Counted from the first letter of the stretch, positions 20,803-42,600 are shown. The stretch is 64,000 nucleotides of DNA from Anthoceros angustus (GCA_010909165.1 MU008223.1:120131-184130); one strand, 5' to 3'. Notes: a model not told the origin generated them from the letters alone. Program-made: numbers and translations.

Positions 20803-20833
<31 letters not shown>

Positions 20834-20861
20834 ATCTATCTATCTATCTATCTATCTATTC

Positions 20862-20920
<59 letters not shown>

Positions 20921-20990
20921 ATCTATCATCTATCTATCATCTATCTATCTATTCATCTATCTATCTATCTATCTATTCATTCATCTATTC

Positions 20991-21036
<46 letters not shown>

Positions 21037-21086
21037 TCATCTATCTATCTATCTATCTATCTATCTATATCATTCATCTATCTATC

Positions 21087-21128
<42 letters not shown>

Positions 21129-21245
21129 TCTATCTATCCATTCATCTATCTATCTATCTATCTATTCATCTATCTATCTATATCTATCTATTCATCTATC
21201 TATCTATCTATCTTCATCTCTATCTATCTATCTATCTATCTATTC

Positions 21246-21277
<32 letters not shown>

Positions 21278-21289
21278 CTATCTATCTTC

Positions 21290-21326
<37 letters not shown>

Positions 21327-21381
21327 CATTCTATCTATCTATCTATCATTCATCTATCTATCTATCTATCTATCTATCTTC

Positions 21382-21448
<67 letters not shown>
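20350..21448 (+). repeat. ~1.1 kb (TCTA)n microsatellite with interspersed TCAT variants at the unit1/unit2 junction
   Basis: Direct inspection. The 398-aa LSIY ORF is a by-product of the repeat. Confidence 0.97.
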
Positions 21449-24400
21449 CATCTATCCAAGAGAGAGTTATGTTCCTATGAGATCCATGAATTTGCCCTTT
21501 GTGTGCCCATAGATTGGTGCTTCTAAATGATGTTTATCCATCCCAAACATCCCATCGATGAACTAGTAAATCTATTCCTTCAATGTTTACGTAATACTAA
21601 TTTGTGAAGGAATTTTTATTGATTTTATTTATTATTTACCCTTTATTATTTTCTTACTAATATGGTTGTTTTCCTTGATTTTTGAGATAAATATTAATTC
21701 AAGGCTGTCTAATATTTATGCAATTTTTATTTGTCTTTTTTGGATAATAAACTTGGAAGCGTGATGTTTGCATTCTTTATGAGTATCTTTCATCTGTTTT
21801 GTTTTTTAGCCTTAGAGAGGTGTCTAACCCATAAAAATGCACCATTAGACTCTTGATAACTATGGAGTGAATAGAATATGAATATGCTTGCCTTTTCCAA
21901 TGGCTATCACCTTTTATTGGTAGAAGGACATAGTGCCTTACCCACTTGGGCATATTAACACCTCATATGGGCCATGTGTACATTTATGACCTCGGACCTT
22001 GTTTCACTTTTTATATACTACTAGGCTATAAATGAGGGATCGACCTATGTGCATGTTTGTTAAAGATGGGTTGATTCCTTGTGGGTTATCATTGGTAGGA
22101 ATGGCTGCCCAATAGGATTATATAACTTGTGAGCGGTTGGATAGAATTTGCTACCCAATGAAATCCCTTCCTCCAAACTTTGGTTGGGGTTCCTCCTTCC
22201 TCTCCTATGCTTAGCCTCTACCTTTGATGATTGTCATTCTCTCTATTGCTCCCCGCCTATTTGCGTGATCACCTTACTTAGTACCTTGGTCTCTTTGTCG
22301 CGTTGCCTCCCCAAGCTAGCCATGGCTACCAAGGTTGAACCTTTTCTCCTCTACTTCACTATGCAACCTTAGAATTAGTGGATGTGCAATGGATCCCGTC
22401 TCACCAAGGATCCAAACGGGCCGATGATCCCTTTTGGTGGTGAAGAAGGAAGGGGAGGGGTGTTGACCAACACCATCTTTGTTCATCCAAGAAGCTAGAC
22501 CTTGATTTGGTCATCCATGGTCTAGTCTTCTAAACTTCAAAGTTTTGTTTTCTCGATGATCTAGAAGCTTGGATAGATGACTCAATGATTGCTAGGGTTT
22601 ATGTCTTACGGATTCCAAAATACGGTTTGATCAACACAAGATACTTCGTGATCCGTGACGTGGCTATGAATGTGTCGTGCGCTACATTTTGTCTGGATGC
22701 CTCGTATTGGATGCATGTCTGGAATTGTCATCCTTGGGATACGACTCAAGGTCCCGCTTAGGTTGAATGATAGGTGGTAACGATCGCTTCATTTGGCGAC
22801 GGGCAAGATTACATATGAATGGTTTATAGGGATGTTTGACACAGATAAACATTATGCTACGGATGATCGCTTATGCTTGCGGGACAACGCCAACCTAGTT
22901 TTGCGTACCGCTACCACGGTGGATGTACGCTCGACCGCAGGATCACACTAGAAAACGGAACCCGCAGCAAGGGCCTCTGCCGACGCTTTTTGATCGGACG
23001 GGTTGGGCGATTGATGGTTTGCTGCTCGATGCCATCATGGTTTGCTTGCTGGAAACGGCGACCATCCGGTTTGAGGGTTCTCTTGCCGCCAATGCATGGA
23101 GCCATACAAATGGCGAAGCGTGCCGAGCACTGGGTTTTACTACCACCGTGGCTGCTTGCGCTGATTGCTGGAAATTGAGTGTGATGCGAGCCATTTGCTA
23201 CCGCGGTGGGTGCTAGATTGCCTGAGGAGATCGAGGTCGGTGCGTGGAAGCAAGGAATGACGGGCGGTGAGGAGAACGACGTGGACAAGCGCAGTTGAAT
23301 CAAACGGATGGTCTGTCGTTTGGAATCACTTGACGGTCACACAAGATTGCTGAGAATGGCGATAGGGATGCATGTGTGTGACGACGATGGGCATAGTGTC
23401 GCTAGATGATTGCTTGAGCTTGCGGCCGACGCCGACAGTTTAGCATAACGCTCACCACGGTTGGATGTGCTGCTGACTCATGAGGATCACATGGAAAATT
23501 GGGAGTCCGTCAAGGCAAGGGCCTTTTTGGACGCTTCCGACCGGACGGGTTGGAGGATTACTAGTTTTTCTGCCCTCGCCATCACTCATGGATTGCTTGT
23601 TGGGAATGATGACCATGCTGGCGGTTTCTGTGGCTCGCCTTGCTTGGAACCATGCAAATGACGCCGAAGCGGTGAGACGCCCGATGGTTTTGCTACCATG
23701 GATGCCATCAGAAATTGGTGTCGGTGGTGATAGAGCGTTGCAACGGATGATGGATGCTGGATATGCATTTGATAGATCCGGGTTGTCGATCTAAAACTTG
23801 ACCGGATGGCCATCGCCGCTTTTTTGTCACAACCGCTGGGATCCGGTGATGTGCGGTCTTGTGCATCACTCAACATGCTTGATGACGATTCACTGAGTAG
23901 AGTTTGCTTGATGAACCATCTCACGGGGTGTGACGCCCGTATCAAGGATCGACTTTGGAGCAACCAATAAAGAGGTCTGAGGGGTGATAATATGCGATGC
24001 TGGTTCGGATTGATGAGACGCTTTGCTCAGCGATGCATGATGGTCTGTAATGACCATGGGTGAAAATGATACAAGTAGGACGATCCGTTGCAAGGAAGTG
24101 TGTGATGCTTAGACTGAGACTTGAGAGAAACGATGAAAGTGTAGTTTAGTTGCAATGATACATATGGGTGTATGTGGAGACTAAGATGCGCAACGGACGT
24201 GCCGGTGGTTGTTTGATGATGTGAGTGGCGGATGAGCCTAAAAACAATGCAAGCAATGATGCACACTTTGCCCGCTATGCCGCAAGGCATGTGGGTTTTG
24301 AATGCGCTTATCGGATGAGTGGGCGATTTGCTTTTGCCGCCCCTCATCGCTCATGGATTGCTGGGAATGCATTCGCTTGAGGGTTCTACCAAGGCATGCC

Positions 24401-24824
24401 AAATGTGACAAGTGGCACCGCTTTTGCCGCAGACACGCTGACTAATGGTATTTTTTTTCTTGATTGCTGAAAAATGTGATGTTATATGCATGTACACGAG
24501 CTATGCTATGCTGCTGATGGAAAGAGTGCTTATAAGACCGGTTCACTTTGGTTGATTCATATTCTAACTACTTACCAACCGGGCCGACGGGAAATTGCCA
24601 TTGCATGCCTTTACACAATCATCCGTGTGCACGCTACAAATGTGATATTTTCATACCAAGGAGGGCATATTGGATCTCTCACACATGGGGTTTATGGAAT
24701 TAGGAGACCTATGGTCCGGAAAATCCTTCCATGGGATTCGGATTTTAAAATATATCTCTAAACATCACTTTGCTTGAAATGACTACCATGTCGCACTTGC
24801 ATTTATGCGATGTAGTCTAGGAAA
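21449..24824 (+). repeat. Array unit 2 (beta subtype)
   Basis: Shares GCTTAGGTTGAATGA...CAAGATTACATATGAATGGTTTATAGG and beta-type 3' variants with unit 5. Confidence 0.88.
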
Positions 24825-24834
24825 TCTATCTATC

Positions 24835-27800
24835 TTGTTTGGTCACCAAGAATCTTTTCAACCTTTGCCGGTTTAGAAAGTCAGTCAAATCTCTTGTGGA
24901 TTAATCATGTGGTGTTCCAAATGTGTTGGACTCACTAAGTGGAAATTGGCTTGGTGTTCTGTGGCAATCGAGTTTCTCCCGCCTCATTCAAGGCTACACA
25001 TGCTGGTTTGATCCCCCTTCTCGTGGCCGCTGTGATTGCTTCCATTGTCCCCTCCATTCATGCTGAAATTCAATTGCACGATAGCGCAGCATGGCGTCGC
25101 TTGTGGTGATGGATGGCACCCATCCGCTGGAGGTCCTCTCATTCAACGATTGCAAGCTTGCCAATAACCAGATAGTGATGAAGGGATGAAGCTTCTTCAA
25201 ACCATTGAGCGTAACTTGGAGCAATGTGTCGTCAATGACGGTAGATGCACAAGCAGCTTGGACGAGGAAAGAGTTCGGATTGCCAAGGCTCAAGGTTGCA
25301 GTCGCATGAGCCCCGGCCCATGCTTCACAGAGGGCGGATTCAACCATCTCGGCTTCCCACGCCAACATGACGGAGGAGGACCGCACCTTCATGAAATACG
25401 CCCAAGCACAAGAAATAAAGGCAACAAACGGCGAGGGTTCCTCTCATGAGCAATGTCCATTCCTCTTGTTGCACCTAGGGACATTGAGGTCGATTGCTTG
25501 CCATCTCCACAAGATGTGGACTGGCTCTAACCTCTCTTACTTGGCACCTTCATCGCTGAAACTTTTCAAGTCCTTTGTAGGCTAAGTGATGAAGAAATGG
25601 CGCGCTAAGGGGATGGAAATGTGGCTTCTGGCCGGGTGACGCAATTTTGCTTTGATGCTACCAAATGCCGAATCGATGAGATGATGTTGTGTAGGGTAAA
25701 AGGCTGTGAAAACCAGGGAAGGACCATGATGACAAAACATGGTGGAATTGGCTCAGCCTACATCAAATGCATCGCCAAGATTTGTTGAACAGTGATGGTA
25801 GGGCTGCCCGCAATGGCGATCATCCGGTTTGACCAAGCCCTCGTTCATGGTACAAGATTTGGATGAGTTCTTTCTGGCGAGCCTCCGTGTTCAATGGTTG
25901 CCTTCACGACCCTTCGAATGCTGGCCAAAACCGTGATTGTGTGAAAGCCCACATTTCCTTCATGTATGTACGTGAAATGATCTTTGGATGGTGCTGCATT
26001 TGCCACTAACCCCACCCAAAGGCTCCTTGTTGCATTCTGGATCAGAAAACTCATGATAGAGAAAATGATCAAGCCTCCTTCCTTCACGGAAGAATGCGAT
26101 CGCTTGATGAAACAGAGTTGAGGTCCAATCAAAAATCCTATATGCGCAAAGCAAAGTCCGATGGGGACAAGCGAAAAGTCCTCACCAGAGGCACCTGTGG
26201 CAAGGTGTGGCCCTATGATGCACAATAGGTTTTCTAACAAATATCTACTATCGACAGAAAGAAGACTCTCCTATGGCTCGACATTAGCAACCTTAGCTCT
26301 CCAGCCTCGATCCGACACCGGCTCCTTCCAACACACATGGTGACGCACTCCCGGTGCCTCTTCTACCTCTAAGCCTCCTAGTGGACTACGGGAATCAAAC
26401 TCGTGATTTTGTAAGTTGCCGATGACCCTCTTTTCTTTGTCCGCTAATTTTTCCTTGGTTGCCTTTTCTGTGTCATCGATGATCCGGTGCTCGCATGTTG
26501 CTTTTGACATGAGAATGGCAATTAGTGAAGCATGCACCGATACCAATGGTTTCGTTCACACGTTGTCTCGTAATAGATTGGAACATTTGCAAGTGAAAAG
26601 TTTTGACCAAGCTACTAACATGCTTGGTGATGCCTCCTTGATGTTAGTCTTGGAAACTACCTTTGATGGAGACATGTTGCCTCCTTGAGGCAAGAGGTGT
26701 ACAAGCCTCGGAAAGTTTTGTGGATTTTCTTTTGAACTGGAGATAGTGTGCCCAGAGACACTTGCGTGTGCCCATCACAAAAGCGCTTCAAGCTTTTGTG
26801 GATCCTTTGACCATGGATCCCAATGATGGGGTGGCTCATGTTACCGCTGATTGTGCTCGTGAGGGACCGTAACCTCCAAGCACAACTCAAGATGGGATAA
26901 AGATCCCCTTGCCTCCCTCAACGTCCCGATCTTTGTGGAGAGTGTTCGGATTCTTTGCACAACTTGTGGAAATTTTCTTGGCACATGGGTGCAATCTGTT
27001 GATGAGCATGTTTTTGGCCCAAAATTGGCGCTCAGCTTCCAATCTTTGAGACAAGCCAAAAACAAAGGCTTTGGTCCTATGGTAGGACTCATGTTCGAAA
27101 ATTCATGCGCAAGGGATGAGCTCTCATGGCTCCTTAACCACCTCTATTGTTCGCCTTGATAAAGCCAACGCCCCTGCTTTTCAATGCACCTTCTATGTCG
27201 AAATGTGCCTTGAAAAGACTTTGTGATCCGGACTTTTCACCCCGGCCGGAAAATGGCACTTGGTTGCCTATCTCACATATCCCGAGTAACATTCAATTCC
27301 ACCGAAAGCATACTCCCGAGATTCCGGTGGACCAAGACTTTGGTCTCCCTACCTCATGGGAATTTTTAAACAGCATAAATTGAAGCATGTGTGGTTAACC
27401 AATGGACATGATTGTGTGTTCTCTATCTTGGCACCTACTCACATTTGCCACAAATCTTATTATTCCAATTTTAAGGGATTGGACCCTTGGGCTTCAAGAG
27501 GGCTATAAAACCTACTTGGAGTGGATACCTCAATGTTTTGGATCACGGAATCCGTGGTACAAGTGGCAATCAATCTCCCGCTAAAATACATTCCATTTTA
27601 GTCATGGATATTACGCGATGCTATGAGGCTATTCCACACAAGGGAAGACTCCCGAAGCCATGGCTTTTGTCTTAAAAGGCATACATGTCACGAACATGAG
27701 CAAAACTAAAACCTTATGGGTGAAATACTCACCCGCAAGGCTTTTGTGATTACAAGTGGGTTTATGATACACCTAGTTGCACCACCGGACCATGGATCCC

Positions 27801-28731
27801 TCTCCCATACGAGAGACTCCTAAGTCTCCACTTATGGCTTATGCAAGCAAAATGTCCAGCTTGGAAACCACGGTTGCAAACCTGCATCCCAATGGGCTTT
27901 TCATGCTCTCCACTTTGGTGCAACTTGTACTTCTTCTCCTATGAATGCCGCTTCATTCAACGCCTAGCACGACTAGGAAGAATCGATCTAATGGCACTGC
28001 TCAAAGAAGCTAGAAGATACATTGATGATATCCGGCTCAACCGCCACCGCTCACGAATTCTTGGACCCTAATGCTAAGCGTGATCATAATCCCTATTGGA
28101 CTCCACATTGTTGAAATCCAACAAGAGGTGGATGAAACTTACCTAATCGCCGAGGGCATCACACTTGGAAAGTCGGCCCACTTTCTAAACATGCAAATTC
28201 ATATTGAGGATCCCATCCTTGGAATTTATAAGACCTATAAGTTGACAAACGAAGGGCTCTCCCATTCAAATATGCACAATACATCCACTTGAACTCTAAT
28301 AGACCAATTCGCCAAGCATACAATGTAATTGTGTCTCAAGTGTTCCCTATCCTCTATGTATCTAGTGAGGCCTCACTAGCCTACATAGAACTCATGGAAC
28401 TTATTAAAGCCTTCATCAACAATGGCTTTAGGAACACAAGCTTAAAACCATTGTTAAAAATGCTTAATGCTTGGAACCTTCCTGGTCTTAAGTTCCCAAT
28501 TGAGGATCTTGTTAGCATGTTCAATTAATTTCCCACATAACTTCTCTCTATGGGATGGTTAGATAGATTTATGTATATGATGCTTCATGCATCATGTTTT
28601 TTCTCTCATTTTATTACAATTATATTTCCTTTGGTGGTATAAATATCCTTGGATCAAGGGCATTTGTATACCTCATTTGCCCCCCGATCCAAAAAGGAAT
28701 ATATTTGTAAATTCAACCAGGAGAGTGGAGG
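24835..28731 (+). mobile_element. Penelope-like retroelement copy 1 (Naiad/Chlamys-type), frameshifted ORF ending at 28528
   Basis: CVC (CxC) linker at 26763; VRLDKAN ~27150; DITRCYEAIPH 27607; IPMGFSCSPLWCNLYFFSYE 27886; RYIDDI 28015; SNRP..QAYNVIVSQ ~28295. The stop follows the thumb domain, with no C-terminal endonuclease. TCTA flanks both ends. Confidence 0.9.
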
Positions 28732-28751
28732 TATCTATCTATCTATCTATC

Positions 28752-31700
28752 CATCTATCCAAGAGAGAGTTATGTTCCCTATGAGATCCATGAATTTGCC
28801 CTTTGTGTGCCCATAGATTGGTGCTTCTAAATGATGTTTATCCATCCCAAACATCCCATCGATGAACTAAAAATCTATTCCTTCAATGTTTACGTAATAC
28901 TAATTTGTGAAGGAATTTTTATTGATTTTATTTATTATTTACCCTTTATTATTTTCTTACTAATATGGTTGTTTTCCTTGATTTTTGAGATAAATTTTAA
29001 TTCAAGATAGTCTAATATATGCAGTTTTATTTGTCTTTTGGATAATAAACTTGGAAGCGTGATGTTTACAAGTATCTTTCATATGTTTTGTTTTTGACCT
29101 TAGAGAGGTATCTAACCCATAAAAATGCACCATTAGACTCTTGATAACTATGGAGTGAATAGAATATGAATATGCTTGCCTTTTTCCAACTGGCTATCAC
29201 CTTTTAATGGTAGAAGGACATAGTGCCTTACCCACTTGGGCATATTATAATTAACACCATATGGGCCATGTGTACATTTATGACCTCGGACCTTGTTTCA
29301 CTTTTAATATATACTACTAGGCTATAAATGAGGATCGACCTATGTGCATGTTTGTTAAAGATGGGTTGATTCCTTGTGGGTTATCATTGGTAGGAATGCC
29401 CAATAGGATTATATAACTTGTGAGCTGGTTGGATAGAATTTGCTACCCAATGAAATCCCTTCCCTCCAAACTTTGGTTGGGGTTCCTCCCTTCCCTCTCC
29501 TATGCTTAGCCTCTACCTTTGATGATTGTCATTCTCTCTATTGCTCCTGCCCTCTATTTGCGTGATCACCTTACTTAGTACCTTGGTCTCTTTGTCGCGT
29601 TGCCTCCCCAAGCTAGCCATGGCTACCAAGGTTGAACCTTTTTCTCCTCTCTTCTACTTCACTATGCAACCTTAGAATTAGTGGATGTGCAATGGATCCC
29701 GTCTCACCAAGGATCCAGAAACGGGGCCGATGATCCCTTTTTGGTGGCTGAAGAAGGGAAGGGGGAGGGGGTGTTGACCAACACCATCTTTGTTCATCCA
29801 AGAAGCTAGACCTTGATTTGGTCATCCATGGTCTAGTCTTCTAAACCTCAAGTTGTTTTTTCGGATCTATGATCAAATTGGATAGATGACTCAATGACCG
29901 CTAGGGTTTGTGTCTTACGGATTCAAAATACGGTTTGATCAACACAAGATACTGCCCGCAGTCGTGGCTATGAATGTGTCGTTGTTCGGGCTGCAATTTT
30001 TGTCCGGATGCCTCGTATTGGATGCATGTCGGAATCGTCATCCTTTGGGATCGACTCAAGGTCCCGCTTAGGTGAAGCATCAACGCATCTTGCGTAGGTT
30101 TGACCGCATAATGGAGACCGATATTGATGTTTGATACATGTAGCAAGGAATGACGGTGGCCGTGGGAGGACAACGCAGTGTTGAATGACGTAAAATAGGT
30201 GGTATCTCGCTTGTTTCACGGACTTGAGCACAAGATTGCATGTGAATGGCTTCAAGATAGCATGCGATAGATATTGTGCTCGGATGCTCGCTAAGCTTGC
30301 ATCGGGATGTCGATCTAGTTTTGCATATCGCGCTACCACGGTTGGATGTATTGGCTGATAAGATTGCATCGGAATATTGGGAGTCCGCCGAGGACAAGGG
30401 CCTCTTTGGACGCGCTTTTGATCGGACAGGTTGGACGATCGCTGGTTTTGCGCCCTCGCCATCGCTCATGGATTGCTTGCTAGGAATCATTATCTCGGTT
30501 GAGGGTTCCACCGTGGCTCGCCGTGCTTGGAGCCATACAAAGTGGCGCGTGCGTGGCAGGCGTTGGTTTTGCTTCCACGATGGCTGTCGTTAATCGCTGG
30601 AAATTGATGTCGTGTGCATAGCACGGCCGCCACCTGGTGGGTGCTGGATATGCAGCCGGGTGGATCCAGACGGGTTGTACGTCGATCTAAAACGTGAAGG
30701 ATGACCATGCTACCGAATTTGCTTGGTGACCCGTCTCACGGAGAGGTGTGTCCGACGCCTCGAGGATCGACTATGGGCAAGAAAAAAGGGTCAGGGTCAG
30801 CCGGCTGATTGACCGTCACGGCCTCTTTGACGCGATTTTGACGGTTGGAGGATTGCTGGTTTTTCCGCTCCGCCATCGCTCATGGATTGCTTGAATGATG
30901 ACCATATGGTTTGACGTTCTGCGTGGCCTGCTTGGAGCCATACAAGTGGCGCGCAACGGTGAGACGACCGATGGTTTTGCTACCACGGTGGATGTTCCTT
31001 GATGGGAATTGGTGTCTGTGGTGATTAGCATGATGTCTTTCTCTGGCTGGTGGATCTTTGGATGGGCGGATGGGTGGATCCAGACGGTTGTCGATCTAAA
31101 ACTTGGCCGGATGGTACGCCAATCCTTTTGTCACAACCAGCTGGATCTGGTGATGATGGCGGGTCGACCGCACGGGCTTGATGCTGTGGGCGTGCGGCTG
31201 GAGAAAAGCGATCTGCAATACGCGTTTGCTTACTGCGAGAATGCATGAGGATGTGTGATTGAGATTGGTGCAACTTGATGAGAAAATGATGAACACGCAA
31301 GGAAGTGTGTGATGAGACCGGTGAGCGACTTGGAGAGAAAAGATGCAGTGTAGGTACCGCTATTGGTGACAATGATACGTGTGATGATGGAGCTGCGATT
31401 GGACGACGCCGCTTTGTTTGCCGCAAGGATGTGTATGAAATTAAGACGGTGAGACTAGTGAGCGAATCAAAAAGCGATGCTCATCAAGTGGATGCACTGC
31501 TTTGTTTGCCGCAAGCATCTGTAGGTATGTTTGAGACTCATGAGCGCCCGGAGAAAAACGATGTAGGCTGTGGATGCCGCGTTGTATACGCAAGGATGCA
31601 TGTGGGTGTTTGATGAGACCGATGAACGCCTAGAGAAAACAATGCATACGCACTTCGCTTTTGCAAGGATGCATGTGGTTTGTGATATTGAGACTGGTCG

Positions 31701-32245
31701 CAGCTTTGGAGAGAAAAACGAGACAGCTATAGATGCACACTACTCCTTGCTACAAGGATGCTTGGTAAAGGTTTTGATAACTTACGTGTGACATACCAAC
31801 CATGGACCACAAATGGTGAACTAGTCCATTACGCTACTTTGACAACCACACGAAATTAATGGTGACATGCATGATTTTCTCTCATGAGCTGATGTTCCTA
31901 TTTGTCTGTTGATCTGGTTGCTAGCATGCTGAAAAATGGAAGAGTGCTTATAGACATCTTGGTTCACTGTCGATTCGATGTAGGTGTAACTACTTACCAA
32001 GGGCCGACGGGGAAATTGCATACACATTGTACACAATCATCTGTGCACGCTACAAATGTGATATACTCATACCAAGGAGGCGGATCTGGATCTCTCACAC
32101 ATGGGGTTGCTTTTAATTAGGAGACCTATGGTTCGAACTTGGAAAATCCTTCCGACGGATTTTAAAATATATCTCTAAACAAAGAGCTTTGCTTGAAATG
32201 ACCTAGCTAGGTCGTGACTGCATTTATGCGATGTAGTCTAGGAAA
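28752..32245 (+). repeat. Array unit 3 (alpha subtype)
   Basis: Colinear with units 1 and 4 (GCTTAGGTGAAGCATC... variant). Confidence 0.9.
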
Positions 32246-32255
32246 TCTATCTATC

Positions 32256-35200
32256 TTGTTCGCTCTTGGTTTGGTCACCAAGAATCCTTTCAACCACTGG
32301 TTTAGAAAGTCTGCAGTTCAAATCTCTTGTGGATTAATCATCTGGTGGTGTTCACAAATGTGTTGGACTCACTAAGGTTGGAACTTTGGTGGTGGCAATG
32401 AGTTTCTCCCCCTCATTCACACACACATGCTGGTTTGATCCCCTTCTCGTGGTCACTGGTGATTGCTTCCATTGTCCCCCCCTCCATTCATGCTGAAATT
32501 CAATTGCACGAAGCGGGCAATTGATGTTGTGGTGATGGATGGCACCCCATCCGCTGGAGGTCCTCTCATTCAACGATTGGTGCAAGCTTGCCAATTCACT
32601 AACCAGATGTGATGAAGGGATGAAGCTTCTTCAAACCATTGAGCGAACTTGGAGCAATGTGTCAATGACATGCAACAATATTGACGAGGAAAGAGTTCGG
32701 ATTGCCAAGGCTCAAGGTTGCAATCGGTCAAGATGAGCCCATGCTTCAGAGGGCTGTGATTCAACCATCCTGCTTCCCCACCGCCAACATGACGGAGGAG
32801 GACCGCACCTTCATGCGAGTATGTCAAGCACAAGAAATAAAGCATGACGGCGAGGGTTTCCTCTCATGAGCGGTCCCATTCCTCTTGTTGCACCTAGGGA
32901 CATTGAGGTGATTGTGCTGCCATCTCCCACAAGATGTGATGGCTCTAACCTCTCTTACTTGGCACCTTCACCGCTGAAACTTTTCAAGTCCTTTGTAGGC
33001 TAAGTGATGAAGAAATGGCGATTGTTGAAGGCGTGGATGGAAATGTGGCTTGGGCTGGGTTTTGCAACCGGTAAATGCGCGATCTGCTTTTGATGCTACC
33101 AAATGCCGAATCGTGAGATGATGTTGTGTAGGGTAAAGGCTCGAAAACCGGTGGCCAGCGGGGAAGGACCATGACAAAACATGGTGGAATTGGCTCAGCC
33201 TTACATCAAATGCATCCGCCAAGATTTGTTGATGGATGGTAGGGCTGCCCGCAATGGCGATATCCGTTTGACCAAGCCCTCGTTCATGGTACGCATTTGG
33301 ATGAGTTCTTTCTGGCGAGCCTCCGTGTTCAATGGCTTGCCTTCACGATTCTGAATGGCCAAAACCGTGATTGTGTGAAAGCCCACATTTCCTTCATGTA
33401 TGGTGAAATGATGATGGTGCCGCATTTGCCACTAACCCCACCCAAAGGCTCCTTGTTGCATTCTGGATCGAAAACTCATGATAGAAAATGATCAAGCCTC
33501 CTTCCTTCACGGAAGAATGCGATCGTTGATGAAACAGAGTTGAGGTCCAATCAAAATCCTATATGCGCAAAGCAAAGTCCGATGGGGACAAGCACGAAAA
33601 GTCCTCACCAGAGGCACCCGTGGCAATAGGCAAGGTGGCCCTATGATGCACAATAGGTTTTCTAACAAATATGCCTGGTAGCGGCCCCTACTATCGAAAG
33701 AAGACTCTCCTATGGCTCGGACATTCGCTAGCAACCTTAGCTCTCCACCTCGATCCGACACCCGGCTCCTTCCAACACACATGGTGACGGCACTCAAGGT
33801 GCCTCTTCTACCTCTAAGCCTCCTAGTGGACTACGGAATCAAACTCCGTGATTTTTGTAAGTCGATGACCCTCTTTTCGTTGTCCCGGCTAATTTTTCCT
33901 TGGTTTTCCGGTGTCATCCCCGATGATCCGTGCTGCTGATCGCATGTTGCTTTTGACATGACTGAATGGCAGTGAAGCATGCACCGATACCAATGCTGGT
34001 TTCGTTCACATCTTGTAATAGATGTTGGAACATTTGCAAGTGAACGTTGACCAAGCTACTAACATGCTTGGTGATGCCTCCTTGATGCAACTAGTCTTGG
34101 AAACTACCTTTGGATGGAGACATGTTGCCTCCTTGAGGCAAGAGGTGTACAAGCCTGAAAGTTTTGTGGATTTTCTTTTGAACACGGAGATAGTGTGCCC
34201 GAGACACTTGCGTGTGCCCATCACAAAAGCGCTTCCAAGCTTTTGTGGATCCTTTGACCATGGATCCCAATGATGGGGTGGCTCATGTTCGTGACCGATT
34301 GTGCTCGTGAGGACCGTAACCTCCAAGCACAACTCAAGATGGGGACCGAAGAGATCCCCTTGCCTCCCTCAACGCCCCGGCCGTGGAGAGTGTTCGGATT
34401 CTTTTGCACAACTTGTGGAAATTTTCTTGGCACATGGGTGCAACTGTTGATGAGCATGTTTTGGCCCAAAATTGCGTTCACGGCTTCCAATCTTTGAGAC
34501 AAGCCAAAAACAAAGGCTTTGGTCCTATGGTAGGACTCATGTTCGGAAAATTCATGCGCAAGGGATGAGCTCTCATGGCTCCTTAACCACCTCTATTGTT
34601 CGCCTTGATAAAGCCAACACCACCTGTTTCAATGCACCTTCTATGTCGAAATGTGCCTTGAAAAGACTTTGTGATCCGGACTTTTCACCTGGAAAATGGC
34701 ACTTGGTTGCCTATCTCACATATCGAGTAACATTCAATTCCGTGAAGCATACCCCCGAGATTCCGGTGGACCAAGACTTTGGTCTCCTACCTCATGGGAA
34801 TTTTAAACAGCATAAATTGAAGCACGTGGTTAACCAATGGACATGATTGTGTGTTCTCTATCTTGGACCTACCACATTTGCCACAAATCTTATTATTCCA
34901 ATTTTAAGGATTGGACTTGGGCTTCAAGAGGGCTATAAAACCTACTTGGAGTGGATACCTCAATGTTTTGGATCACGAACTGGTACAAGTGGCAATCAAT
35001 CTCCTAAAATACATTCCATTTTAGTCGCGATATTACGCGATGCTATGAGGCTATTCCACACAAGGGAAGACTCTCCAAGCGCTTTTGTCTTAAAAGACAT
35101 ACGCTCATGTCATGCACACGAGCAAACTAAAACCTTATGGGTGAAATACTCATTCGCCCAAGAATTTTTGTGATTACAAGTGGGTTTATGATACACCTAC

Positions 35201-36139
35201 AGGACCATGGATCCCTCTCATACGAGAGACTCCTAAGTCTCCACTTATGGCTTATGCAAACCGCAATGTCCAGCTTGGAAACCACGCGGTTGCAAACCTC
35301 GGGCATCCCAATGGGCTTTTCATTCTCCACTTTGGTGCAACTTGTACTTCTTCTCCTATGAATGCCGCTTCATTCAACGCCTACGACTAGGAAGAATGAT
35401 CTAATGGCACTGCTCAAAGAAGCTAGAAGATACATTGATGATATCTCCGCTCAACCGCCATTCCACGATTCTTGGACCCTATTGCTAAGCGTGATCGATA
35501 ATCCCTATTGGATCTACCCCTCCACATTGTTGAAATCCAACAAGAGGTGGATGAAACTTACCTAATCCGAGGCATCACACTTGGAAAGTCGGCCCACTTT
35601 CTAAACATGCAAATTCATATTGAGGATCCCATCCTTGGAATTTATAAGACCTATAAGTTCGACAAACGAAGGGCTCTCCCATTCAAATATGCACAATACA
35701 TCCACTTGAACTCTAATAGACCAAGCCAAGCATACAATGTAATTGTCTCAAGTGTTCCCTATCCTCTATGTATCTAGTGAGGCCTCACTAGCCTACATAG
35801 AACTCATGGAACTTATTAAAGCCTTCATCAACAATGGCTTTAGGGAACACAAGCTTAAAACCATTGTTAAAAATGCTTAATGCTTGGAACCTTCGGTCTT
35901 AAGTTCCCAATTGAGGATCTTGTTAGCATGTTCAATTAATTTCCCACATAACTTCTCTCTATGGGATGGTTAGATAGATTTATGTATATGATGCTTCATG
36001 CATCATGTTTTTTCTATCATTTTATTATATTTCCTTTTTGGCTGGTATACAAATATCCTTGGATCAAGGGCATTTGTATACCTCATTTGCCCCGATCCAA
36101 AAGGAATATATTTGTAAATTCAACCAGGAGAGTGGAGGG
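32256..36139 (+). mobile_element. Penelope-like retroelement copy 2 (Naiad/Chlamys-type), frameshifted ORF ending at ~35939
   Basis: DTCVCPSQKRFQAFVDPLTMDPNDGVAHV at ~34203-34290; IVRLDKAN ~34595; GIPMG 35302; RYIDDI 35428; FLNMQIHI..YKFDKRRALPFKYAQYIHLNSNRP. Both termini match copy 1. Confidence 0.9.
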
Positions 36140-36163
36140 TATCTATCTATCTATCTATCTATC

Positions 36164-39100
36164 CATCTATCCAAGAGAGAGTTATGTTCCCTATGAGATC
36201 CATGAATTTGCCCTTTGTGTGCCCATAGATTGGTGCTTCTAAATGATGTTTATCCATCCCAAACATCCCATCGATGAACTAAGTAAATCTATTCCTTCAA
36301 TGTTTACGTAATACTAATTTGTGAAGGAATTTTTATTGATTTTATTTATTATTTACCCTTTATTATTTTCTTACTAATATGGTTGTTTTCCTTGATTTTG
36401 AGATAAATTTTAATTCAAGATAGTCTAATATGTATGCAGGTTTTATTTGTCTTTTTGGATAATAAACTTGGAAGCGTGATGTTTACAAGTATCTTTCATA
36501 TGTTTTGTTTTTGACCTTAGAGAGTATCTAACCCATAAAAATGCACCATTAGACTCTTGATAACTATGGAGTGAATAGAATATGAATATGCTTGCCTTTT
36601 TCCAACTGGCTATCACCTTTTAATGGTAGAAGGACATAGTGCCTTACCCACTTGGGCATATTATAATTAACACCTCATATGGGCCATGTGTACATTTATG
36701 ACCTCGGACCTTGTTTCACTTTTAATATATACTACTAGGCTATAAATGAGGGATCGACCTATGTGCATGTTTGTTAAAGATGGGTTGATTCCTTGTGGGT
36801 TATCATTGGTAGGAATGGCTGCCCAATAGGATTATATAACTTGTGAGCGTGGTTGGATAGAATTTGCTACCCAATGAAATCCCTTCCTCCAAACTTTGGT
36901 TGGGGTTCCTCCCTTCCTCTCCTATGCTTAGCCTCTACCTTTGATGATTGTCATTCTCTCTATTGCCCCCGCCTCTATTTGCGTGATCACCTTACTTAGT
37001 ACCTTGGTCTCTTTGTCGCGTTGCCTCCCCAAGCTAGCCATGGCTACCAAGGTTGAACCTTTTCTCCTCTCTTCTACTTCACTATGCAACCTTAGAATTA
37101 GTGGATGTGCAATGGATCCCGTCTCACCAAGGATCCGAACGGGCCGATGATCCCTTTTGGTTGAAGAAGGAAGGGGAGGTGTTGACCAACACCATCTCTG
37201 CATCCAAGAAGCTAGACCTTGATTTGGTCATCCGGTCTAGTCTTCTAAACCTCAAGTTGTTTTTCGGTATGATCTAGAAGCATGGATAGATGACTCAATG
37301 ACCGCTAGGGTTTGTGTCTTACTGATTCAAAATACCGGTTTGATCAACACAAGATACTTCGTGCCCCAGTGGACGTGGCTATGAATGTGTTGTTCGTGCT
37401 GCAATTTTTGTCTGGATGCCTCGTATTGGATGCATGTCGGAATCGTCATCCTTTGGGATCGACTCAAGGTCGCTTAGGTGAAGCATCCACCGCATCTTGC
37501 GAGGTTTGACCGCATTGGGAGTTGATGTTTGATACATGTAGCAAGGAATGACGGTGGTGGGAGGACAACGAGTGTTGAATGAGAAAATAGGTGGTTGTGC
37601 TTTTGGACGATCCCGAGCACAAGATTGCATGTGAATGGCTTCAAGATAGCATGCGATAGATATTGTGCTACCGGATGCTCGCTTAAGCTTGCACGGGATG
37701 TCGATCTAGTTTTGCATATCGCGTTACCACGGTTGGATGTACCGCTTGACCGCATGTAAGATTGCATCGAATATTGGGAGTCCACGAGGACAAGGGCCTC
37801 TTTGGACGCGCTTTTGATCGGAGTTGACGATTGCTGGTTTTGCCCTCGCCGCCATCGCTCATGGATTGCTAGGAATCATTATCTCGGTTGAGGGTTCCAC
37901 TGCGGGCTGCCGTGCTTGGAGTGGCGCGCGCAGTGGTGCCGCAGCGACACTGCTGGTTTTGCTTCCACGATGGTTTTCGTTAATCGCTGGAAATTGATGT
38001 CGTGCGGTGCATAGCACGACGTACATTGGTGGGTCTGGATATGCGTGGGTGGATCCAGACGGGGTTGTACGTCGATCTAAAACGTGAACGGATGACCATG
38101 CCAAAGAATTTGCTTGGTGACCGTCTCACGGAGGTGTGTCCGACGCCCAGTGAGGATCGACTATGGGCAAGAAAAAAGGTCGGGGCCGGGGGCTGATTAG
38201 TCTGGCCGCCTCTTTTGACGCGATTTTGACGGGTTGGAGGATTCTTGGTTTTTTCGCTCCACGCCATCGCTCATGGATTGCTTGGGAATGATGACCATAT
38301 GGTTTGACGGTTCGCTGTGGCGCCATGCTTGGAGCCATACAAGTGGCGCAAGCGGTGAGACGACCCGATGGTTTTGCTACCACGGTGGATGTTCAGTTGC
38401 CGGAATTGGTGTCTGTGGTGATTAGCATGACGCTGCTGGTGGATGCCGGATGGGCGGATGGGTGGATCAGACGGGGTTGTCGATCTAAAACTTGATCGGG
38501 ATATGCGCGCCAATCCTTTGTCACAACCCGGGATCGGTGATGTGGCGGGCGCCACCGCACGTGGATGGCTTGTGATGGCGGCGTGCGGCTGGAGAGAAAA
38601 CGATGGCAATACAACGCGCCGCTTGCTTTGCGAGAATGCATGAGGATGGTGATTGAGATTGGTGCAACTTGATGAGAAAATGATGTAATGTCGTAAGGAA
38701 GTGTGTGATCCGACCGGTGAGCGACTTGGAGAGAAAAAGAGTGAGTACTGCCTATTGGTGACAATGATACTGTGGGTGTGTGATGATGGAGATCACGCGA
38801 CAATGGACGACGCTTGTTTGCCGTAAGGATGTGTATGAAATTAAGACGGCCGAGACTAGTGAGCGACCAAAAACGATGCTCATCAAGTGGATGGTTTTGC
38901 TTTGCCGCACAATGAGGTATGTAATGGTTGAGACTCATGAGCCCGGAGAAAACGATGTGTGGATGCACGTTGTATACTTCTGCAAGGATGCATGTGGGTG
39001 TTTGATGATTGAGAGGCGAACGGCCTAGAGAAAACAATGCAAGCAATGATGCACACCTCGCCGTAAGGATGCATGTGGGTTTGTGATATTGAGGCCGCCA

Positions 39101-39634
39101 GCTTGGAGAGAAAACGAGATGCTATAGATGCACACTACCCTCAAGGATGCTTATAAAGGTTTTGATAACTTACGGTGACATACCAACCATGGACCACAAA
39201 TGGTGAATCGTTTCTTACGCTACTTTGACAACCATAAATTAATGGTGACATGCATGATTTTTCTCTCTCATGAGTGATGTTCCTATTTGCCTGTTGATCC
39301 TGGCTAGCATGCTGAAAAATGGAAGAGTGCTTATAGACATCTTGGTTCACTTCTCTCGATTCGTATGCCTAACTACTTACCAACCTGGCCGACGGGAAAT
39401 TGCGACACATTGCATGCCTTTACACAATCATCCGTGTGCATGCTACAAATGTGATATACTCATACCAAGGAGGGTCTATCGGATCTCTCACACATGGGGT
39501 TGCTGAATTAGGAGACCTATGGTGAACGGAAAATCCTTCCACAGGATTCTGGATTTTAAAATATATCTCTAAGCAGCTTTGCTTGAAATGACTGGCTAGG
39601 TCATGCAAGCATTTATGCGATGTAGTCTAGGAAA
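36164..39634 (+). repeat. Array unit 4 (alpha subtype), followed by the empty junction TCTATCTATC (39635-39644)
   Basis: GTAGTCTAGGAAA-TCTATCTATC-CATCTATCCAAG at 39622-39656. Confidence 0.9.
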
Positions 39635-39644
39635 TCTATCTATC

Positions 39645-42600
39645 CATCTATCCAAGAGAGAGTTATGTTCCTATGAGATCCATGAATTTGCCCTTTGTGT
39701 GCCCATAGATTGGTGCTTCTAAATGATGTTTATCCATCCCAAACATCCCATCGATGAACTAAGTAAATCTATTCCTTCAATGTTTACGTAATACTAATTT
39801 GTGAAGGAATTTTTATTGATTTTATTTTTACCCTTTATTATTTTCTTACTAATATGGTTGTTTTCCTTGATTTTGAGATAAATTTTAATTCAAGATAGTC
39901 TAATATGTATGGGTTTTATTTGTCTTTTTGGATAATAAACTTGGAAGCGTGATGTTTGCATTCTTTATAAGTATCTTTCATATGTTTTGTTTTTGACCTT
40001 AGAGAGGTGTCTAACCCATAAAAATGCACCATTAGACTCTTGATAACTATGGAGTGAATAGAATATGAATATGCTTTTTCCAAATGGCTATCACCTTTTA
40101 TTGGTAGAAGGACATAGTGCCTTACCCACTTGGGCATATTAACACCTCATATGGGCCATGTGTACATTTATGACCTCGGACCTTGTTTCACTTTTAATAT
40201 ATACTACTAGGCTATAAATGAGGGATCGACCTATGTGCATGTTTGTTAAAGATGGGTTGATTCCTTGTGGGTTATCATTGGTAGGAATGGCTGCCCAATA
40301 GGATTATATAACTTGAGCCGTTGGTTGGATAGAATTTGCTACCCAATGAAATCCTTCCCTCCAAACTTTGGTTGGGGTTCCTCCCTTCCTCCTATGCTTA
40401 GCCTCTACCTTTGATGATTGTCATTCTCTCTATTGCTCCGCCCTCTATTTGCGTGATCACCTTACTTAGTACCTTGGTCTCTTTGTCGCGTTGCCTCCCC
40501 AAGCTAGCCATGGCTACCAAGGTTGAACCTTTTCTCCTCTCTACTTCACTATGCAACCTTAGAATTAGTGGATGTGCAATGGATCCCGTCTCACCAAGGA
40601 TCTAAACGGGCCGATGATCCCTTTTGGTGGTGAAGGGAAGGGGAGGTGTTGACCAACACCATCTTTGTTCATCAAGAAGCTAGACCTTGATTTGGTCATC
40701 CATGGTCTAGTCTTCTAAACTTCAAAGTTTTGTTTTCTCATGATCTAGAAGCGGATAGATGACTCAATGGTTGCTAGGGTTTATGTCTTACGGCTTCCAA
40801 ATACCCGGGTCTGATCAACACAAGATACTTCGTGATCCGGCCGACGTGTGGCTATGAATGTGTTGTTCGCGCTACATTTTCCGTCTGATGCCTCGTATTG
40901 GATGCATGTCTGGAATTGTCATCCGTTGGGATACCGACTCAAGGGCCCGCTTAGGTTGAATGACGTAAAATAGGTGGTATGTTATCGCTTCATTTAGCGT
41001 TCCTGGGCACAAGATTACATATGAATGGTTTATAGGATAGCATACGGTGACGACCGCAGATGGACATTATGCTACCGGATGATCGCTTATGCTTGGGACG
41101 TAACCTAGTTTTGCGTAACACGCTACCACGGTGGGATGTGCTCGTTAAACCGCATCGGGATCACACTAGAAAATCGGGAACCCAAAGCAAGGGCCTCTGC
41201 GGACGCTTTTTGATCGGACGGGTTGGGCGATTGATGGTTTTGCTCGCCCCGATGCCATCGCTCATGGTTTGCTTACGTGAAACGGCGACCATCTAGTTTG
41301 AGGGTTACATTGCTGCGAATGCATGGAGCCATACAAATGGCGCCGCAAGCGCGTGCCGCAGCACTGATGGTTTTACCACCGCGGGCTTGCGCTTGATTGC
41401 GGAAAATTGAGTGTGATGCGTATACATGTGCTACCGGGTGGGTGCTAGATTGCTCATTGCATTGTGAGACCGAGGTCGATGTTTGACACAGGAAGCAAGG
41501 AATGACGGTGGCGGTGAGGAGAACGACGTCGTGACAAGCGCAGTTGAATGACGTAAACCGGATGGTATCAGTCTGCTTGGAATCACTTGACGCTGGACAC
41601 AAGATTGCATGAGAATGGTGATAGGATGCATGTGACGACTGCAGATGGGCATAGTGCTTAGATGATTGCTTGAGCTTGGGTGACGTCGACCTAGTTTAGC
41701 ATAACGCGTTGCGACACGTTGGATGTGCCCTGTTGACTCGTCACAGGGATCACACCGGAAAATTGGGAGTCCGTCAAGGCAAGGGCCTTTTTGACAAGCT
41801 TCAGGACGGTTGGGCGACATTAGTTTTGTCTGCCTCGCTGCCATCACTCACGGATTGCTTGTTGGGAACGATGACCATCCGGCTCGGCGGTTTTGTCGGC
41901 TCGCCTTGCTTGGAACCATGCAAATGACCGCAAGCGCGCCCGACGCCCGATGTTTTGCTACCACGATGCGACCGCCGATCAGAAATTGGTGTCGCGTGGT
42001 GATAGCGCGACGTGCTGCAACGGATGATGGATGCTGGATATGCAGACTAGATAGATCCGGGTTGTCAATCTAAAGCATGACCGGGATGGCCATACGACTG
42101 CCAGTTTTTTTTGTCACAACCGGCTAGGATCTGGTGATGCTGCGTGTCTTCTGTGCATCACTCAACATGCTTCTGTCACCTGGACCTGGATTCCCACGGC
42201 CTGGAGCTGTAGTTTGCTTGATGAACCATCTCACAGGGGGGTATTCTGACGCCTCCAGACTAAGGATCGACTTTGAGCAACCAATAAAGAGGCTCGGGGC
42301 TGAGGGCTGACTGAATATCTGCTCGCGATGCTGGTTCTGGGGATTGATGACCCCGACGTTTGCTCACTGCGAGAATGCATGATGGTCTACAGTGGTAATG
42401 ACCGGTGTGCAATCTGAAGAAAAAATGATACAAGTAGTGGACGCATGCTGTTTGTTGCAAGGAAGTGTGTGATATCTTAGACTCCTGAGCGACTTGGAGA
42501 GAAAACGAGGCAGGCAGTGGGTGCACGCTGTTTCTTAGTTGCAATGATACATATGGGTGTGTGATGTGGGAGACTAAGATGCAGACAGCGGACGTACGCT

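What the first reader, a model, noticed from the sequence alone, without database searches (positions are those of the whole stretch)
24825..36163. Two full-length Naiad/Chlamys-type Penelope-like retroelements inserted precisely in a TCTA microsatellite, with an empty site in the same window
Seen: two ~3.9 kb copies with the same termini carry CxC, DKA, DxxxxYxxIPH, GIPMG, RYIDD and DKR..LPF..Y..SN.P motifs, and the ORF stops right after the thumb domain. The empty junction reads GGAAA-TCTATCTATC-CATCTATCCAAG (39630-39656). Filled junctions read GGAAA-TCTATCTATC-[element]-TA(TCTA)2-3-TCTATCTATC-CATCTATCCAAG, i.e. a >=10-bp target duplication plus extra TCTA units. Established: N-terminal-endonuclease PLEs (Naiad/Chlamys) have a CxC linker, an insertion-in-fingers domain, microsatellite insertion bias and no canonical hammerheads. 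To my knowledge, described plant members come from green algae and spike mosses, where they target rDNA. Inference: this is a (TCTA)n-targeting family, possibly in a new host lineage and with a new target.
Basis: partly seen in the sequence, partly recalled or inferred. Interest (0 to 1): 0.85.

Follow-up and report, generated by a model that had tools for sequence, protein, structure and literature searches.

The report
Penelope-like retroelement in a TCTA-jointed array
Two real copies of a telomerase-related jumping gene without a recognisable nuclease sit in a 26-kb chain of repeats joined by TCTA runs, so they are not two clean hits in a host microsatellite.

Summary
The sequence facts hold. 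There are two ~3.9-kb copies (E1 24835-28731, E2 32256-36139) with the same ends. The junction strings are as quoted, and the RT motifs match the invariant columns of a real protein family.

The family is the CxC-type Penelope-like group that includes the 28S-targeting 'PLE-X' proteins of Selaginella. E carries the N-terminal extension, the CxC motif, the RT and the thumb. No GIY-YIG nuclease and no hammerhead core were found.

The assembled reading frames are broken into pieces of at most 130 aa. Short-read contigs suggest that many of these breaks are assembly indel errors.

The insertion story is only partly right. Both copies and the 'empty site' lie in one head-to-tail array: U0-(TCTA)~275-UA-E1-UB-E2-UC-UD. 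U is a 3.5-kb non-coding repeat, and every inner joint is TCTA. The array's outer ends lie in non-TCTA DNA. An intact relative has precise 1.2-kb pseudo-LTRs that start at the ORF end.

My best reading (about 0.5) is that U is the element's own pseudo-LTR-like partner and that the element makes or uses the TCTA joints. The main rival (0.3) is that U is a host tandem repeat which E targets site-specifically.

The scan has noted the same family with the same 3.5-kb blocks at several other places in this genome.

The parts
17247..20349 (+). U0: 3.5-kb non-coding repeat unit (type 1), lacking its first ~375 nt; its left edge abuts the PMD-like sequence Y
   Evidence: blastn to UC 36530-39625, 84.6%; end motif GATGTAGTCTAGGAAA at 20334-20349; alignment
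20350..21448 (+). 1.1-kb imperfect (TCTA)n joint between U0 and UA, with TTCA/TCA variant units
21449..24824 (+). UA: repeat unit, type 2
   Evidence: start motif CATCTATCCAAGAGAG at 21449; end motif at 24809-24824; block identities
24825..24834 (+). UA|E1 joint TCTATCTATC
24835..28731 (+). E1: coding module of the Penelope-like element. N-terminal-extension homology about 25442-26094, CxC at 26763-26771, RT and thumb 27207-28516, frame ends at 28525, 3' UTR to 28731
   Evidence: family HMM pieces with E down to 9.5e-30; tblastn; N-extension HMM
28552..28570 (+). Site in the E1 3' UTR (GGGATGGTTAGATAGATTT) complementary to the E|U joint; the same site in E2 is at 35963-35981
   Evidence: RNA fold of 28520-28760: the stem pairs this site with the (UCUA)n joint and the first bases of U, z = -4.98; coordinates
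28732..28751 (+). E1|UB joint TA(TCTA)4TC
28752..32245 (+). UB: repeat unit, type 1
32246..32255 (+). UB|E2 joint TCTATCTATC
32256..36139 (+). E2: second coding module. N-extension matches at 32878-32967, 33083-33190 and 33294-33416; CxC at 34209-34217; RT and thumb 34595-35874. It has an extra 11 nt just after its 5' TTGTT compared with E1
36140..36163 (+). E2|UC joint TA(TCTA)5TC
36164..39634 (+). UC: repeat unit, type 1
39635..39644 (+).
39645..43322 (+). UD: repeat unit, type 2, ending ~13 nt before the normal U end and followed directly by Y with no TCTA
16925..17249 (+). Left flank Y: start of a PMD-like ORF, homologous to the right flank
   Evidence: blastn 77.7% over 121 nt, E 7e-13; tblastx; alignment
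43321..43898 (+). Right flank Y: 192-aa ORF whose nearest Atlas clusters are plant-mobile-domain proteins (weak evidence)

Best explanation
E1 and E2 are two copies of one Penelope-like retroelement. Its protein is of the EN-lacking 'PLE-X' type: an N-terminal extension, a CxC motif, a telomerase-related RT and a thumb.

The copies are not hits in an ordinary host microsatellite. They are the coding modules of a 26-kb array in which E alternates with a 3.5-kb non-coding repeat U. All modules have one orientation, and every inner joint is (TCTA)n.

I take U to be the element's own long non-coding partner. It could be a pseudo-LTR-like 3' module of a ~7.4-kb unit E+U, or a rider that the same RT copies. 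I take the TCTA joints to be made or used by the element itself.

Inferred mechanism:
- The RNA ends in, or contains, (UCUA)n.
- The RT has no nuclease of its own, so it primes on a free (TAGA)n 3' end at an existing joint or break.
- Copying often stops, or switches template, at the next TCTA run. New E or U modules are therefore added at joints, and the TCTA runs vary from 10 bp to 1.1 kb.

What is shown: the anatomy, the homology, the joints and the non-TCTA outer ends. What is inferred: transcription, priming and the order of events.
For: 1. Family. Stop-free pieces of E match a profile of ten ~700-aa relatives with E down to 1e-28 and 9.5e-30, and nothing else in the window matches. The relatives include Selaginella moellendorffii EFJ09726 and others. 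In Selaginella they form a head-to-tail array of period 5226 abutting a 28S fragment, as described for PLE-X in PMC8557442.

2. No nuclease was found in E, in U or in the relatives. E's 5' region gives the two best N-extension hits of 2524 window pieces, and they are colinear.

3. Array. All four full U starts and four U ends are identical motifs. TCTA tracts occur only at module boundaries.

4. The outer ends of the array are not TCTA.

5. Analogy. An intact relative (L006-L008) has three dispersed insertions. Each is pLTR(1205 bp)-ORF1-ORF2-pLTR with precise ends, and the pLTR starts 37 nt before the ORF2 stop. U likewise starts ~230 nt after E's frame ends.

6. Both E copies are followed by type-1 U. 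The type-2 units UA and UD are not preceded by E.

7. The best-conserved block between the two 7.4-kb repeats runs from E's RT across the joint into the U head. A predicted stem in the E 3' UTR pairs with the joint and the first bases of U.

8. First-reader notes, unchecked, describe the same E plus 3.5-kb blocks joined by CTAT/TATC at four other loci. One of these notes puts a terminal TCTA tract inside a Ty3 protease coding sequence.
Against: - E1 lies between a type-2 U (UA) and a type-1 U (UB). Their bodies are only 41-70% alike, whereas the pLTR pairs of the relative are near-identical.
- The ends of E and U share no significant similarity apart from the TCTA runs.
- U|U joints without E exist, so U can stand alone.
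- The U head is 96-100% alike in all five units while the body is 41-88% alike. That pattern would also fit a conserved host gene with a variable spacer.
- The co-occurrence of E and U elsewhere in the genome rests on unchecked notes.
- The assembly is noisy (transitions:transversions 371:347, and 220 gap events in 7.5 kb), so arguments from divergence are weak.
Confidence: 0.5

Rival explanations
1. Niche model. U is a host tandem repeat: a satellite, or a repeated gene with a variable spacer. Each unit boundary carries a short TCTA run. E is a site-specific inserter at that boundary, much as its Selaginella relatives insert at one site of the tandem 28S genes. E1 and E2 are then two separate insertions, and UC|UD is a valid unoccupied paralogous site.
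For: The 5' joints are exact and identical, and the empty joint has the same 10 nt. E2 has an extra 11 nt at its 5' end, and the two copies have different TCTA counts at the 3' joint, as expected of separate events. The E RT and U head are far more alike (96-100%) than the UB/UC bodies (about 84%), so E looks younger than the U bodies. The relatives target a tandem gene array. The conserved head with a variable, sub-repeated body resembles a gene plus spacer.
Against: U matches no Rfam family and no Pfam family. Adjacent U units belong to two very different types, which is unusual for a homogenised satellite. The array is bounded by homologous non-TCTA sequence, with a 5'-cut U on the left, which looks like one inserted block. 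The same U accompanies E at several other loci according to unchecked notes.
Confidence: 0.3
2. A single E insertion was followed by unequal crossing-over in the U array, which duplicated a 7.4-kb E+U period. The two copies would then record one event, whatever U is.
For: 24517-32255 aligns colinearly with 31936-39644 over 8 kb. The 5' joints are identical. Both E copies are followed by type-1 U.
Against: A neutral duplication predicts even divergence, but substitution identity ranges from 78% to 100% along the period. UB and UC bodies are no closer to each other than either is to U0. The tail of UA upstream of E1 shows no special likeness to the tail of UB. E1 and E2 differ by an 11-nt stretch at the 5' end.
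Confidence: 0.15
3. The repeat structure is an assembly artefact: a collapsed or falsely duplicated repeat in a noisy long-read assembly.
For: There are many small indels relative to short-read contigs of the same organism. The transition:transversion ratio is near 1.
Against: The units differ by hundreds of substitutions, by large indels and by two U types. Short-read contigs cover both E and U sequence. Similar arrays are noted on other contigs.
Confidence: 0.05

Closest known systems
PLE-X families of spike mosses and Chara (EN-lacking branch of the Chlamys group; Craig et al. 2021, PMC8557442)
   Same: CxC motif, RT and C-terminal thumb. No GIY-YIG. An N-terminal extension that is homologous, though weakly, in colinear pieces. 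Head-to-tail arrays inside tandem repeats. Direct sequence homology to S. moellendorffii proteins (thumb piece E 1.3e-8; profile pieces to 1e-30).
   Different: The joint or target is (TCTA)n next to a 3.5-kb non-coding repeat, not a fixed 28S site. No rRNA is present in the window. No hammerhead core is present. The CxCX1-8C cysteines of the extension are not all seen in the assembled copies. Identity to any relative is only about 38-42%.
Chlamys and Naiad N-terminal-EN Penelope-like elements
   Same: CxC linker, RT at the C-terminus, lack of canonical hammerheads, association with microsatellites, pseudo-LTRs and multicopy head-to-tail insertions.
   Different: The defining N-terminal GIY-YIG nuclease was looked for and not found. 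The reported microsatellites are (CA)n and (C)n for Chlamys and (TA)n for Naiad, not (TCTA)n.
Unnamed intact relative in ENA assembly ERZ25073694 (loci L006-L008)
   Same: Two-part coding capacity: an N-extension ORF1 plus a CxC-RT ORF2. A long non-coding repeat starts at the ORF end and is also present upstream with precise ends. The body starts ACATCTATCC, which resembles the TCTATC run before E's 5' end.
   Different: Its pLTR is 1.2 kb and its copies are near-identical. Its insertions are dispersed in unrelated DNA. It has no microsatellite joints, and ORF1 and ORF2 are intact.
EN-deficient telomere-associated PLEs (Athena, Coprina) and telomerase (from my own knowledge of Gladyshev and Arkhipova 2007; not read here)
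   Same: An RT without a nuclease. Head-to-tail arrays separated by short runs of a simple repeat that could base-pair with the RNA 3' end.
   Different: TCTA is not a known plant telomere repeat. The array is internal and flanked by other transposons. Priming on the repeat is inferred, not shown.

Membership tests
Penelope-like elements (RT clade) | RT with the PLE-type core and thumb motifs, homologous to described PLE RTs | tested here: met
   Pieces of E1 and E2 match the profile of relatives that include the Selaginella PLE-X proteins (E 1.3e-28 and 9.5e-30). The motifs fall on invariant columns. Pfam RVT_1 gives only a weak hit, as it does for the relatives.
Penelope-like elements (RT clade) | RT phylogeny places it with PLEs and not with LINE, LTR or group II RTs | not tested
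A PDB sequence search with the family profile gave nothing useful.
Naiad/Chlamys N-terminal EN+ PLEs | N-terminal GIY-YIG endonuclease | tested here: not met
   Pfam on 49 stop-free pieces of both 5' regions gave no GIY-YIG at E<=1. A GIY..YIG motif scan of E and U on both strands found nothing. The relatives have none either. Caveat: frames broken by indels lower the sensitivity.
Naiad/Chlamys N-terminal EN+ PLEs | CxC motif upstream of the RT | tested here: met
   CVC at 26763-26771 and 34209-34217, aligned to the invariant C44/C46 of the relatives.
Naiad/Chlamys N-terminal EN+ PLEs | Insertion-in-fingers domain | not tested
   No reference with marked IFD limits was at hand.
Naiad/Chlamys N-terminal EN+ PLEs | No canonical hammerhead ribozyme | tested here: met
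   Rfam found none at E<=1 and E<=10. There is no CTGA[TC]GA box in 17247-43320 on either strand.
Naiad/Chlamys N-terminal EN+ PLEs | Insertion bias for microsatellites | tested here: inconclusive
   All inner joints are TCTA, but the joints are paralogous and the array's outer ends are not TCTA.
PLE-X (EN-lacking, Craig et al. 2021) | CxC present, GIY-YIG absent | tested here: met
PLE-X (EN-lacking, Craig et al. 2021) | Unique N-terminal extension with a CxCX1-8C motif | tested here: inconclusive
   Homology to the extension is supported by colinear weak hits: 25442-25558 (E 0.055; an earlier profile gave E 0.012 for 25376-25570 of the same piece), 25999-26094, and E2 32878-32967 / 33083-33190 / 33294-33416. 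PYIKC is conserved, but the full cysteine pattern is not seen in the assembled copies.
PLE-X (EN-lacking, Craig et al. 2021) | Canonical hammerhead ribozymes | tested here: inconclusive
   None was found in E or U. The same tools also found none in the S. moellendorffii array, so the test cannot separate members from non-members.
PLE-X (EN-lacking, Craig et al. 2021) | Insertion at a fixed 28S rDNA site (spike-moss families only) | tested here: not met
   There is no rRNA in the window. The Selaginella control locus does abut 28S.
PLE structural habit | Pseudo-LTRs or partial head-to-tail tandems | tested here: inconclusive
   U-E-U-E-U-U is a head-to-tail array. U shares no sequence with E, so it is not a 5'-truncated copy of the 3.9-kb module. 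It fits a pLTR only if the unit is E+U, as in L006-L008.

The most novel reading that the evidence does not exclude
A nuclease-less, telomerase-related RT builds its own non-telomeric repeat joints. It would prime on (TAGA)n ends. It might also copy the short UAGAUAGAU site in its 3' UTR reiteratively, laying down (TCTA)n from 10 bp to over 1 kb. In doing so it would chain itself and a 3.5-kb non-coding RNA into long arrays, as an internal-chromosome counterpart of telomere-primed retrotransposition.
Probability: 0.12. Interest if true: 0.75.

Novelty: new variant of a known kind. Interest (0 to 1): 0.45.

Why it matters
PLE-X elements are the PLE branch for which it is not known how integration works without a nuclease (PMC8557442). 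Here is a second lineage, in a land plant outside the spike mosses, that again lives in tandem repeats but with simple-repeat joints instead of a 28S site. That gives a concrete hypothesis to test: priming by base-pairing on a short repeat. It also offers material for studying how pseudo-LTR-like arrays form.

There is a practical lesson as well. 'Filled versus empty site' reasoning inside a repeat array does not prove independent insertions. In addition, this assembly's small indels break real ORFs.

Tried and rejected
- Pfam on single E pieces gave only a weak RVT_1 hit.
- Rfam found no family in the window, including hammerheads. A hand scan for hammerhead cores also found none.
- The GIY-YIG search was negative.
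- Comparing the 400-nt ends of E and U showed no meaningful similarity.
- U pieces against Pfam gave nothing credible. A bacterial-type promoter/terminator scan of the U head was uninformative.
- The family profile against PDB sequences gave only chance hits.
- An AlphaFold model of the intact relative's ORF1 (the N-extension) had mean pLDDT 44.6, too poor to search for a hidden nuclease fold, so no fold search was run.
- Public runs yielded only one DNA run, kept as contigs. Those contigs break at the TCTA joint, so no junction census or copy numbers could be drawn. The depth figures are not used as evidence.
- A permissive pattern search for the 3' UTR site mostly hit the microsatellites and was replaced by an exact scan.
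- A search for LTR pairs in the flanks found none.
- I rejected 'degenerate dead copies' as a conclusion. Blocks with 0-4 substitutions still carry 2-6 gap events. A 558-nt short-read contig differs from E2 by 3 letters and 17 gaps. At 35743 the contig's extra 2 nt falls exactly where E2's frame breaks but E1's does not.
Full report
**The observation**

A self-comparison of the window shows that 24517-32255 aligns colinearly with 31936-39644 (8 kb, 88% with gaps). Within this stretch lie two 3.9-kb copies, E1 24835-28731 and E2 32256-36139. They are 89% identical by blastn and 94.2% identical counting substitutions only, with 122 gap events.

- ..GTAGTCTAGGAAA-TCTATCTATC-TTGTT.. at both 5' ends.
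- ..GAGAGTGGAGG(G)-TA(TCTA)4 or 5 TC-CATCTATCCAAG.. at both 3' ends.
- ..GGAAA-TCTATCTATC-CATCTATCCAAG.. at 39622-39660.

All the named protein motifs are on the + strand. There is no continuous ORF, however. The longest stop-free + strand piece is 130 aa, and the RT is spread over several frames in both copies.

**Are the copies dead, or is the assembly noisy?**

Between the two 7.4-kb repeats there are 220 gap events and 718 mismatches in 7.5 kb, with a transition:transversion ratio of 371:347. Blocks with 0-4 substitutions still hold 2-6 gap events.

Short-read contigs of the same coded organism lie on E2 and U with very few substitutions but many small insertions. One 558-nt contig shows 3 letters and 17 gaps; a 317-nt contig shows 1 letter and 15 gaps. 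At 35743 the contig has 2 extra nt exactly where E2's thumb frame breaks, while E1 reads through.

An earlier agent saw the same kind of frame-breaking gaps elsewhere in this assembly. I conclude that many frameshifts are assembly errors. Whether E1 and E2 are intact cannot be judged from the window.

**What the protein is**

The thumb piece 28241-28525 finds 83 proteins at E<=0.001, with the best at 5.9e-20. In every long hit the match lies at the C-terminal end. One cluster is Selaginella moellendorffii EFJ09726 and its paralogues.

Ten long relatives align well, with an invariant CxC and the motifs GxDKA, IP, GIPMG, RYIDD, DKRxLPF and SNRP. A profile of them matches E1 pieces at 1.3e-28 (27742-28038) and 9.5e-30 (28244-28516), and E2 pieces at up to 3.8e-24. 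It matches nothing else in the window. E is about 38-42% identical to any relative.

The Selaginella locus is a head-to-tail array of period 5226 that abuts a 28S fragment. That matches the 28S-targeting, EN-lacking 'PLE-X' families of Craig et al. 2021 (PMC8557442).

**No endonuclease, but an N-terminal extension**

- Pfam finds no GIY-YIG in 49 stop-free pieces of the two 5' regions.
- A GIY..YIG motif scan of E and U on both strands is empty.
- The relatives have none either.

Instead, E's 5' region is colinear with the N-terminal extension of this family. A profile built from the extension of a close metagenomic relative (L001), its homologues and Selaginella P0100 puts its two best hits, out of 2524 window pieces, in E1. 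These are piece 25310-25582 (aligned 25376-25570, E 0.012) and 25981-26118, and they lie in the right order and spacing.

The intact ORF1 of another relative (L006) gives three colinear matches in E2, at 32878-32967, 33083-33190 and 33294-33416 (HLDEFF against HLDKFF). A second profile repeats the result.

Each hit is weak. It is the colinearity and rank that make the case. The CxCX1-8C cysteines are not all visible in the assembled copies.

E's last piece ends where the relatives' proteins end, so there is no C-terminal domain. E is therefore a self-contained coding module of the PLE-X type, not an N-terminal-EN Naiad/Chlamys element in the strict sense.

No hammerhead was found. Rfam was run at E<=1 and E<=10, and there is no CUGAUGA/CUGACGA box in the 26 kb on either strand. 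The same tools also found none in the Selaginella array, so this test does not discriminate.

**The surroundings change the story**

The flanks of E are copies of a 3.5-kb repeat, U. The window holds this array, all on the + strand:
- U0 (17247-20349, 5'-cut)
- a 1.1-kb imperfect (TCTA)n tract
- UA (21449-24824)
- E1
- UB (28752-32245)
- E2
- UC (36164-39634)
- UD (39645-43322, 3'-cut)

All four complete U starts and four U ends are identical 16-23-nt motifs. The 'empty site' is the UC|UD joint.

Every (TCTA)>=3 tract in the 64 kb lies at a boundary of such a module. That includes a fold-back at 1169-2171, where a third, unrelated sequence X ends in TCTA. U matches no Pfam or Rfam family, and its ends share nothing with E's ends.

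U comes in two types: U0, UB and UC are one type, UA and UD the other. The first ~900 nt are 96-100% alike in all units, whereas the body is 41-88% alike. Between the two 7.4-kb repeats the best-conserved block runs from the RT across the joint into the U head.

**The array's outer ends are not TCTA**

On the right, UD stops 13 nt short of the usual U end and is followed directly by a 192-aa ORF, Y. On the left, U0 starts at about U position 376, directly after a 325-nt stretch homologous to the start of Y. That homology is 77.7% over 121 nt by blastn (E 7e-13), with conserved peptides by tblastx. Y's nearest Atlas clusters are plant-mobile-domain proteins, which is weak evidence.

This looks like a 5'-truncated block inside duplicated target DNA, or like two Y paralogues. 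I cannot tell which. Either way, the locus gives no sign that a host TCTA microsatellite was the original target.

**Relatives with pseudo-LTRs**

In ENA assembly ERZ25073694 an intact relative occurs at three unrelated places (L006-L008). Each copy is a 1205-bp repeat, ORF1 (556 aa; an N-extension homologue at E 5e-79, with an RGG-rich tail), ORF2 (772 aa) and the same 1205-bp repeat again. The repeat starts 37 nt before the ORF2 stop, and its ends are precise to the base.

By analogy, U starts ~230 nt after E's frame ends and also stands upstream of E, so it may be the long pseudo-LTR-like module of a 7.4-kb unit. Unchecked first-reader notes describe the same family with ~3.5-kb blocks joined through CTAT/TATC at several other places in this genome. 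One of these notes puts a terminal TCTA tract inside a Ty3 protease coding sequence.

**Weighing the readings**

For the composite reading (0.5):
- the analogy with the pLTR-bearing relative;
- the pairing of E with type-1 U;
- the conserved block that crosses the joint;
- a predicted 3' UTR stem (z = -4.98) that pairs GGGAUGGUUAGAUAGAU with the joint and the first bases of U;
- the non-TCTA outer ends;
- the notes from other loci.

Against it:
- E1 sits between U units of different types;
- E and U share no end sequence;
- U|U joints exist without E.

The niche reading (0.3) treats U as a host tandem repeat that E targets, as its relatives target 28S. It explains the exact joints, the 11-nt difference at E2's 5' end, and E looking younger than the U bodies. 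It does not explain the two interleaved U types or the block-like outer ends.

A single insertion followed by unequal crossing-over (0.15) predicts even divergence, which is not seen. The noisy assembly weakens that argument.

**Mechanism**

All of this is inferred. An RT without a nuclease needs a free 3' end. RNA carrying (UCUA)n can pair with a (TAGA)n end at a nick or break in an existing joint. Synthesis that stops or switches template at the next TCTA run would add whole E or U modules at joints and leave TCTA runs of variable length.

**Novelty and what was not done**

I found no paper in the held library on PLEs in hornworts or on TCTA-jointed PLE arrays. Craig et al. already mention BlastP hits for this type in mosses. 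I rate this a new variant of a known kind.

Not done:
- the RT phylogeny;
- the genome-wide flank table;
- any check of the host's identity, because the organism is coded;
- any consensus of the copies.

Noticed in passing
window 181-3171: Fold-back. A ~1-kb sequence X (181-1168) ends in (TCTA)n (1169-1548). That tract meets (TAGA)n (1554-2171) head-on and is followed by an inverted copy of X (2172-3171, 84.5%). X is unrelated to E and U, so it is a third kind of TCTA-tailed module.
   Followed up: partly
window 20350-21448: The U0|UA joint holds 1.1 kb of imperfect (TCTA)n with recurrent TTCA/TCA variant units. The same joint elsewhere holds 10 bp, or an E module.
   Followed up: partly
window 16925-17249 and 43321-43898: The array is bounded on both sides by homologous starts of a PMD-like ORF (77.7% over 121 nt, with conserved peptides). 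This may be a long target duplication around a 5'-truncated block, or two paralogues.
   Followed up: partly
window 28552-28570 and 35963-35981: Just after E's stop codon lies a site complementary to the E|U joint (16 of 18 nt). The 241-nt 3' end folds with this long-range stem at z = -4.98. It could be a structural clamp or a template-like site.
   Followed up: partly
window 17247-43320 and other stretches: The assembly carries roughly one small indel per 30-50 nt relative to short-read contigs of the same organism, mostly missing bases. ORFs in this genome are therefore broken artificially.
   Followed up: partly
window 37796-38091 vs 38208-38499, and matching places in the other U units: The U body contains diverged ~300-nt internal sub-repeats (74% alike) and a recurring ~60-80-nt motif (TCATGGATTGCTTG...).
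   Followed up: no
window 10339-12917 (-) and 56937-58301 (+): Remains of other retrotransposons: RVT_1 (E 2e-18) and a gag zinc knuckle on the minus strand, and a Copia-type gag / pre-integrase on the plus strand. The region is transposon-rich.
   Followed up: no
L006:4887-11486 (also L007, L008): An intact, very young PLE-X-like family (copies 99.9% alike) in an ENA assembly, with precise 1205-bp pseudo-LTRs and a 556-aa ORF1 that ends in an RGG-rich tail. It is good material for experiments on this EN-lacking group.
   Followed up: partly
L001:635-781: The closest metagenomic relative of E has the thumb end of a second, diverged copy about 3.7 kb upstream of its CxC, which is a partial tandem arrangement.
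   Followed up: no
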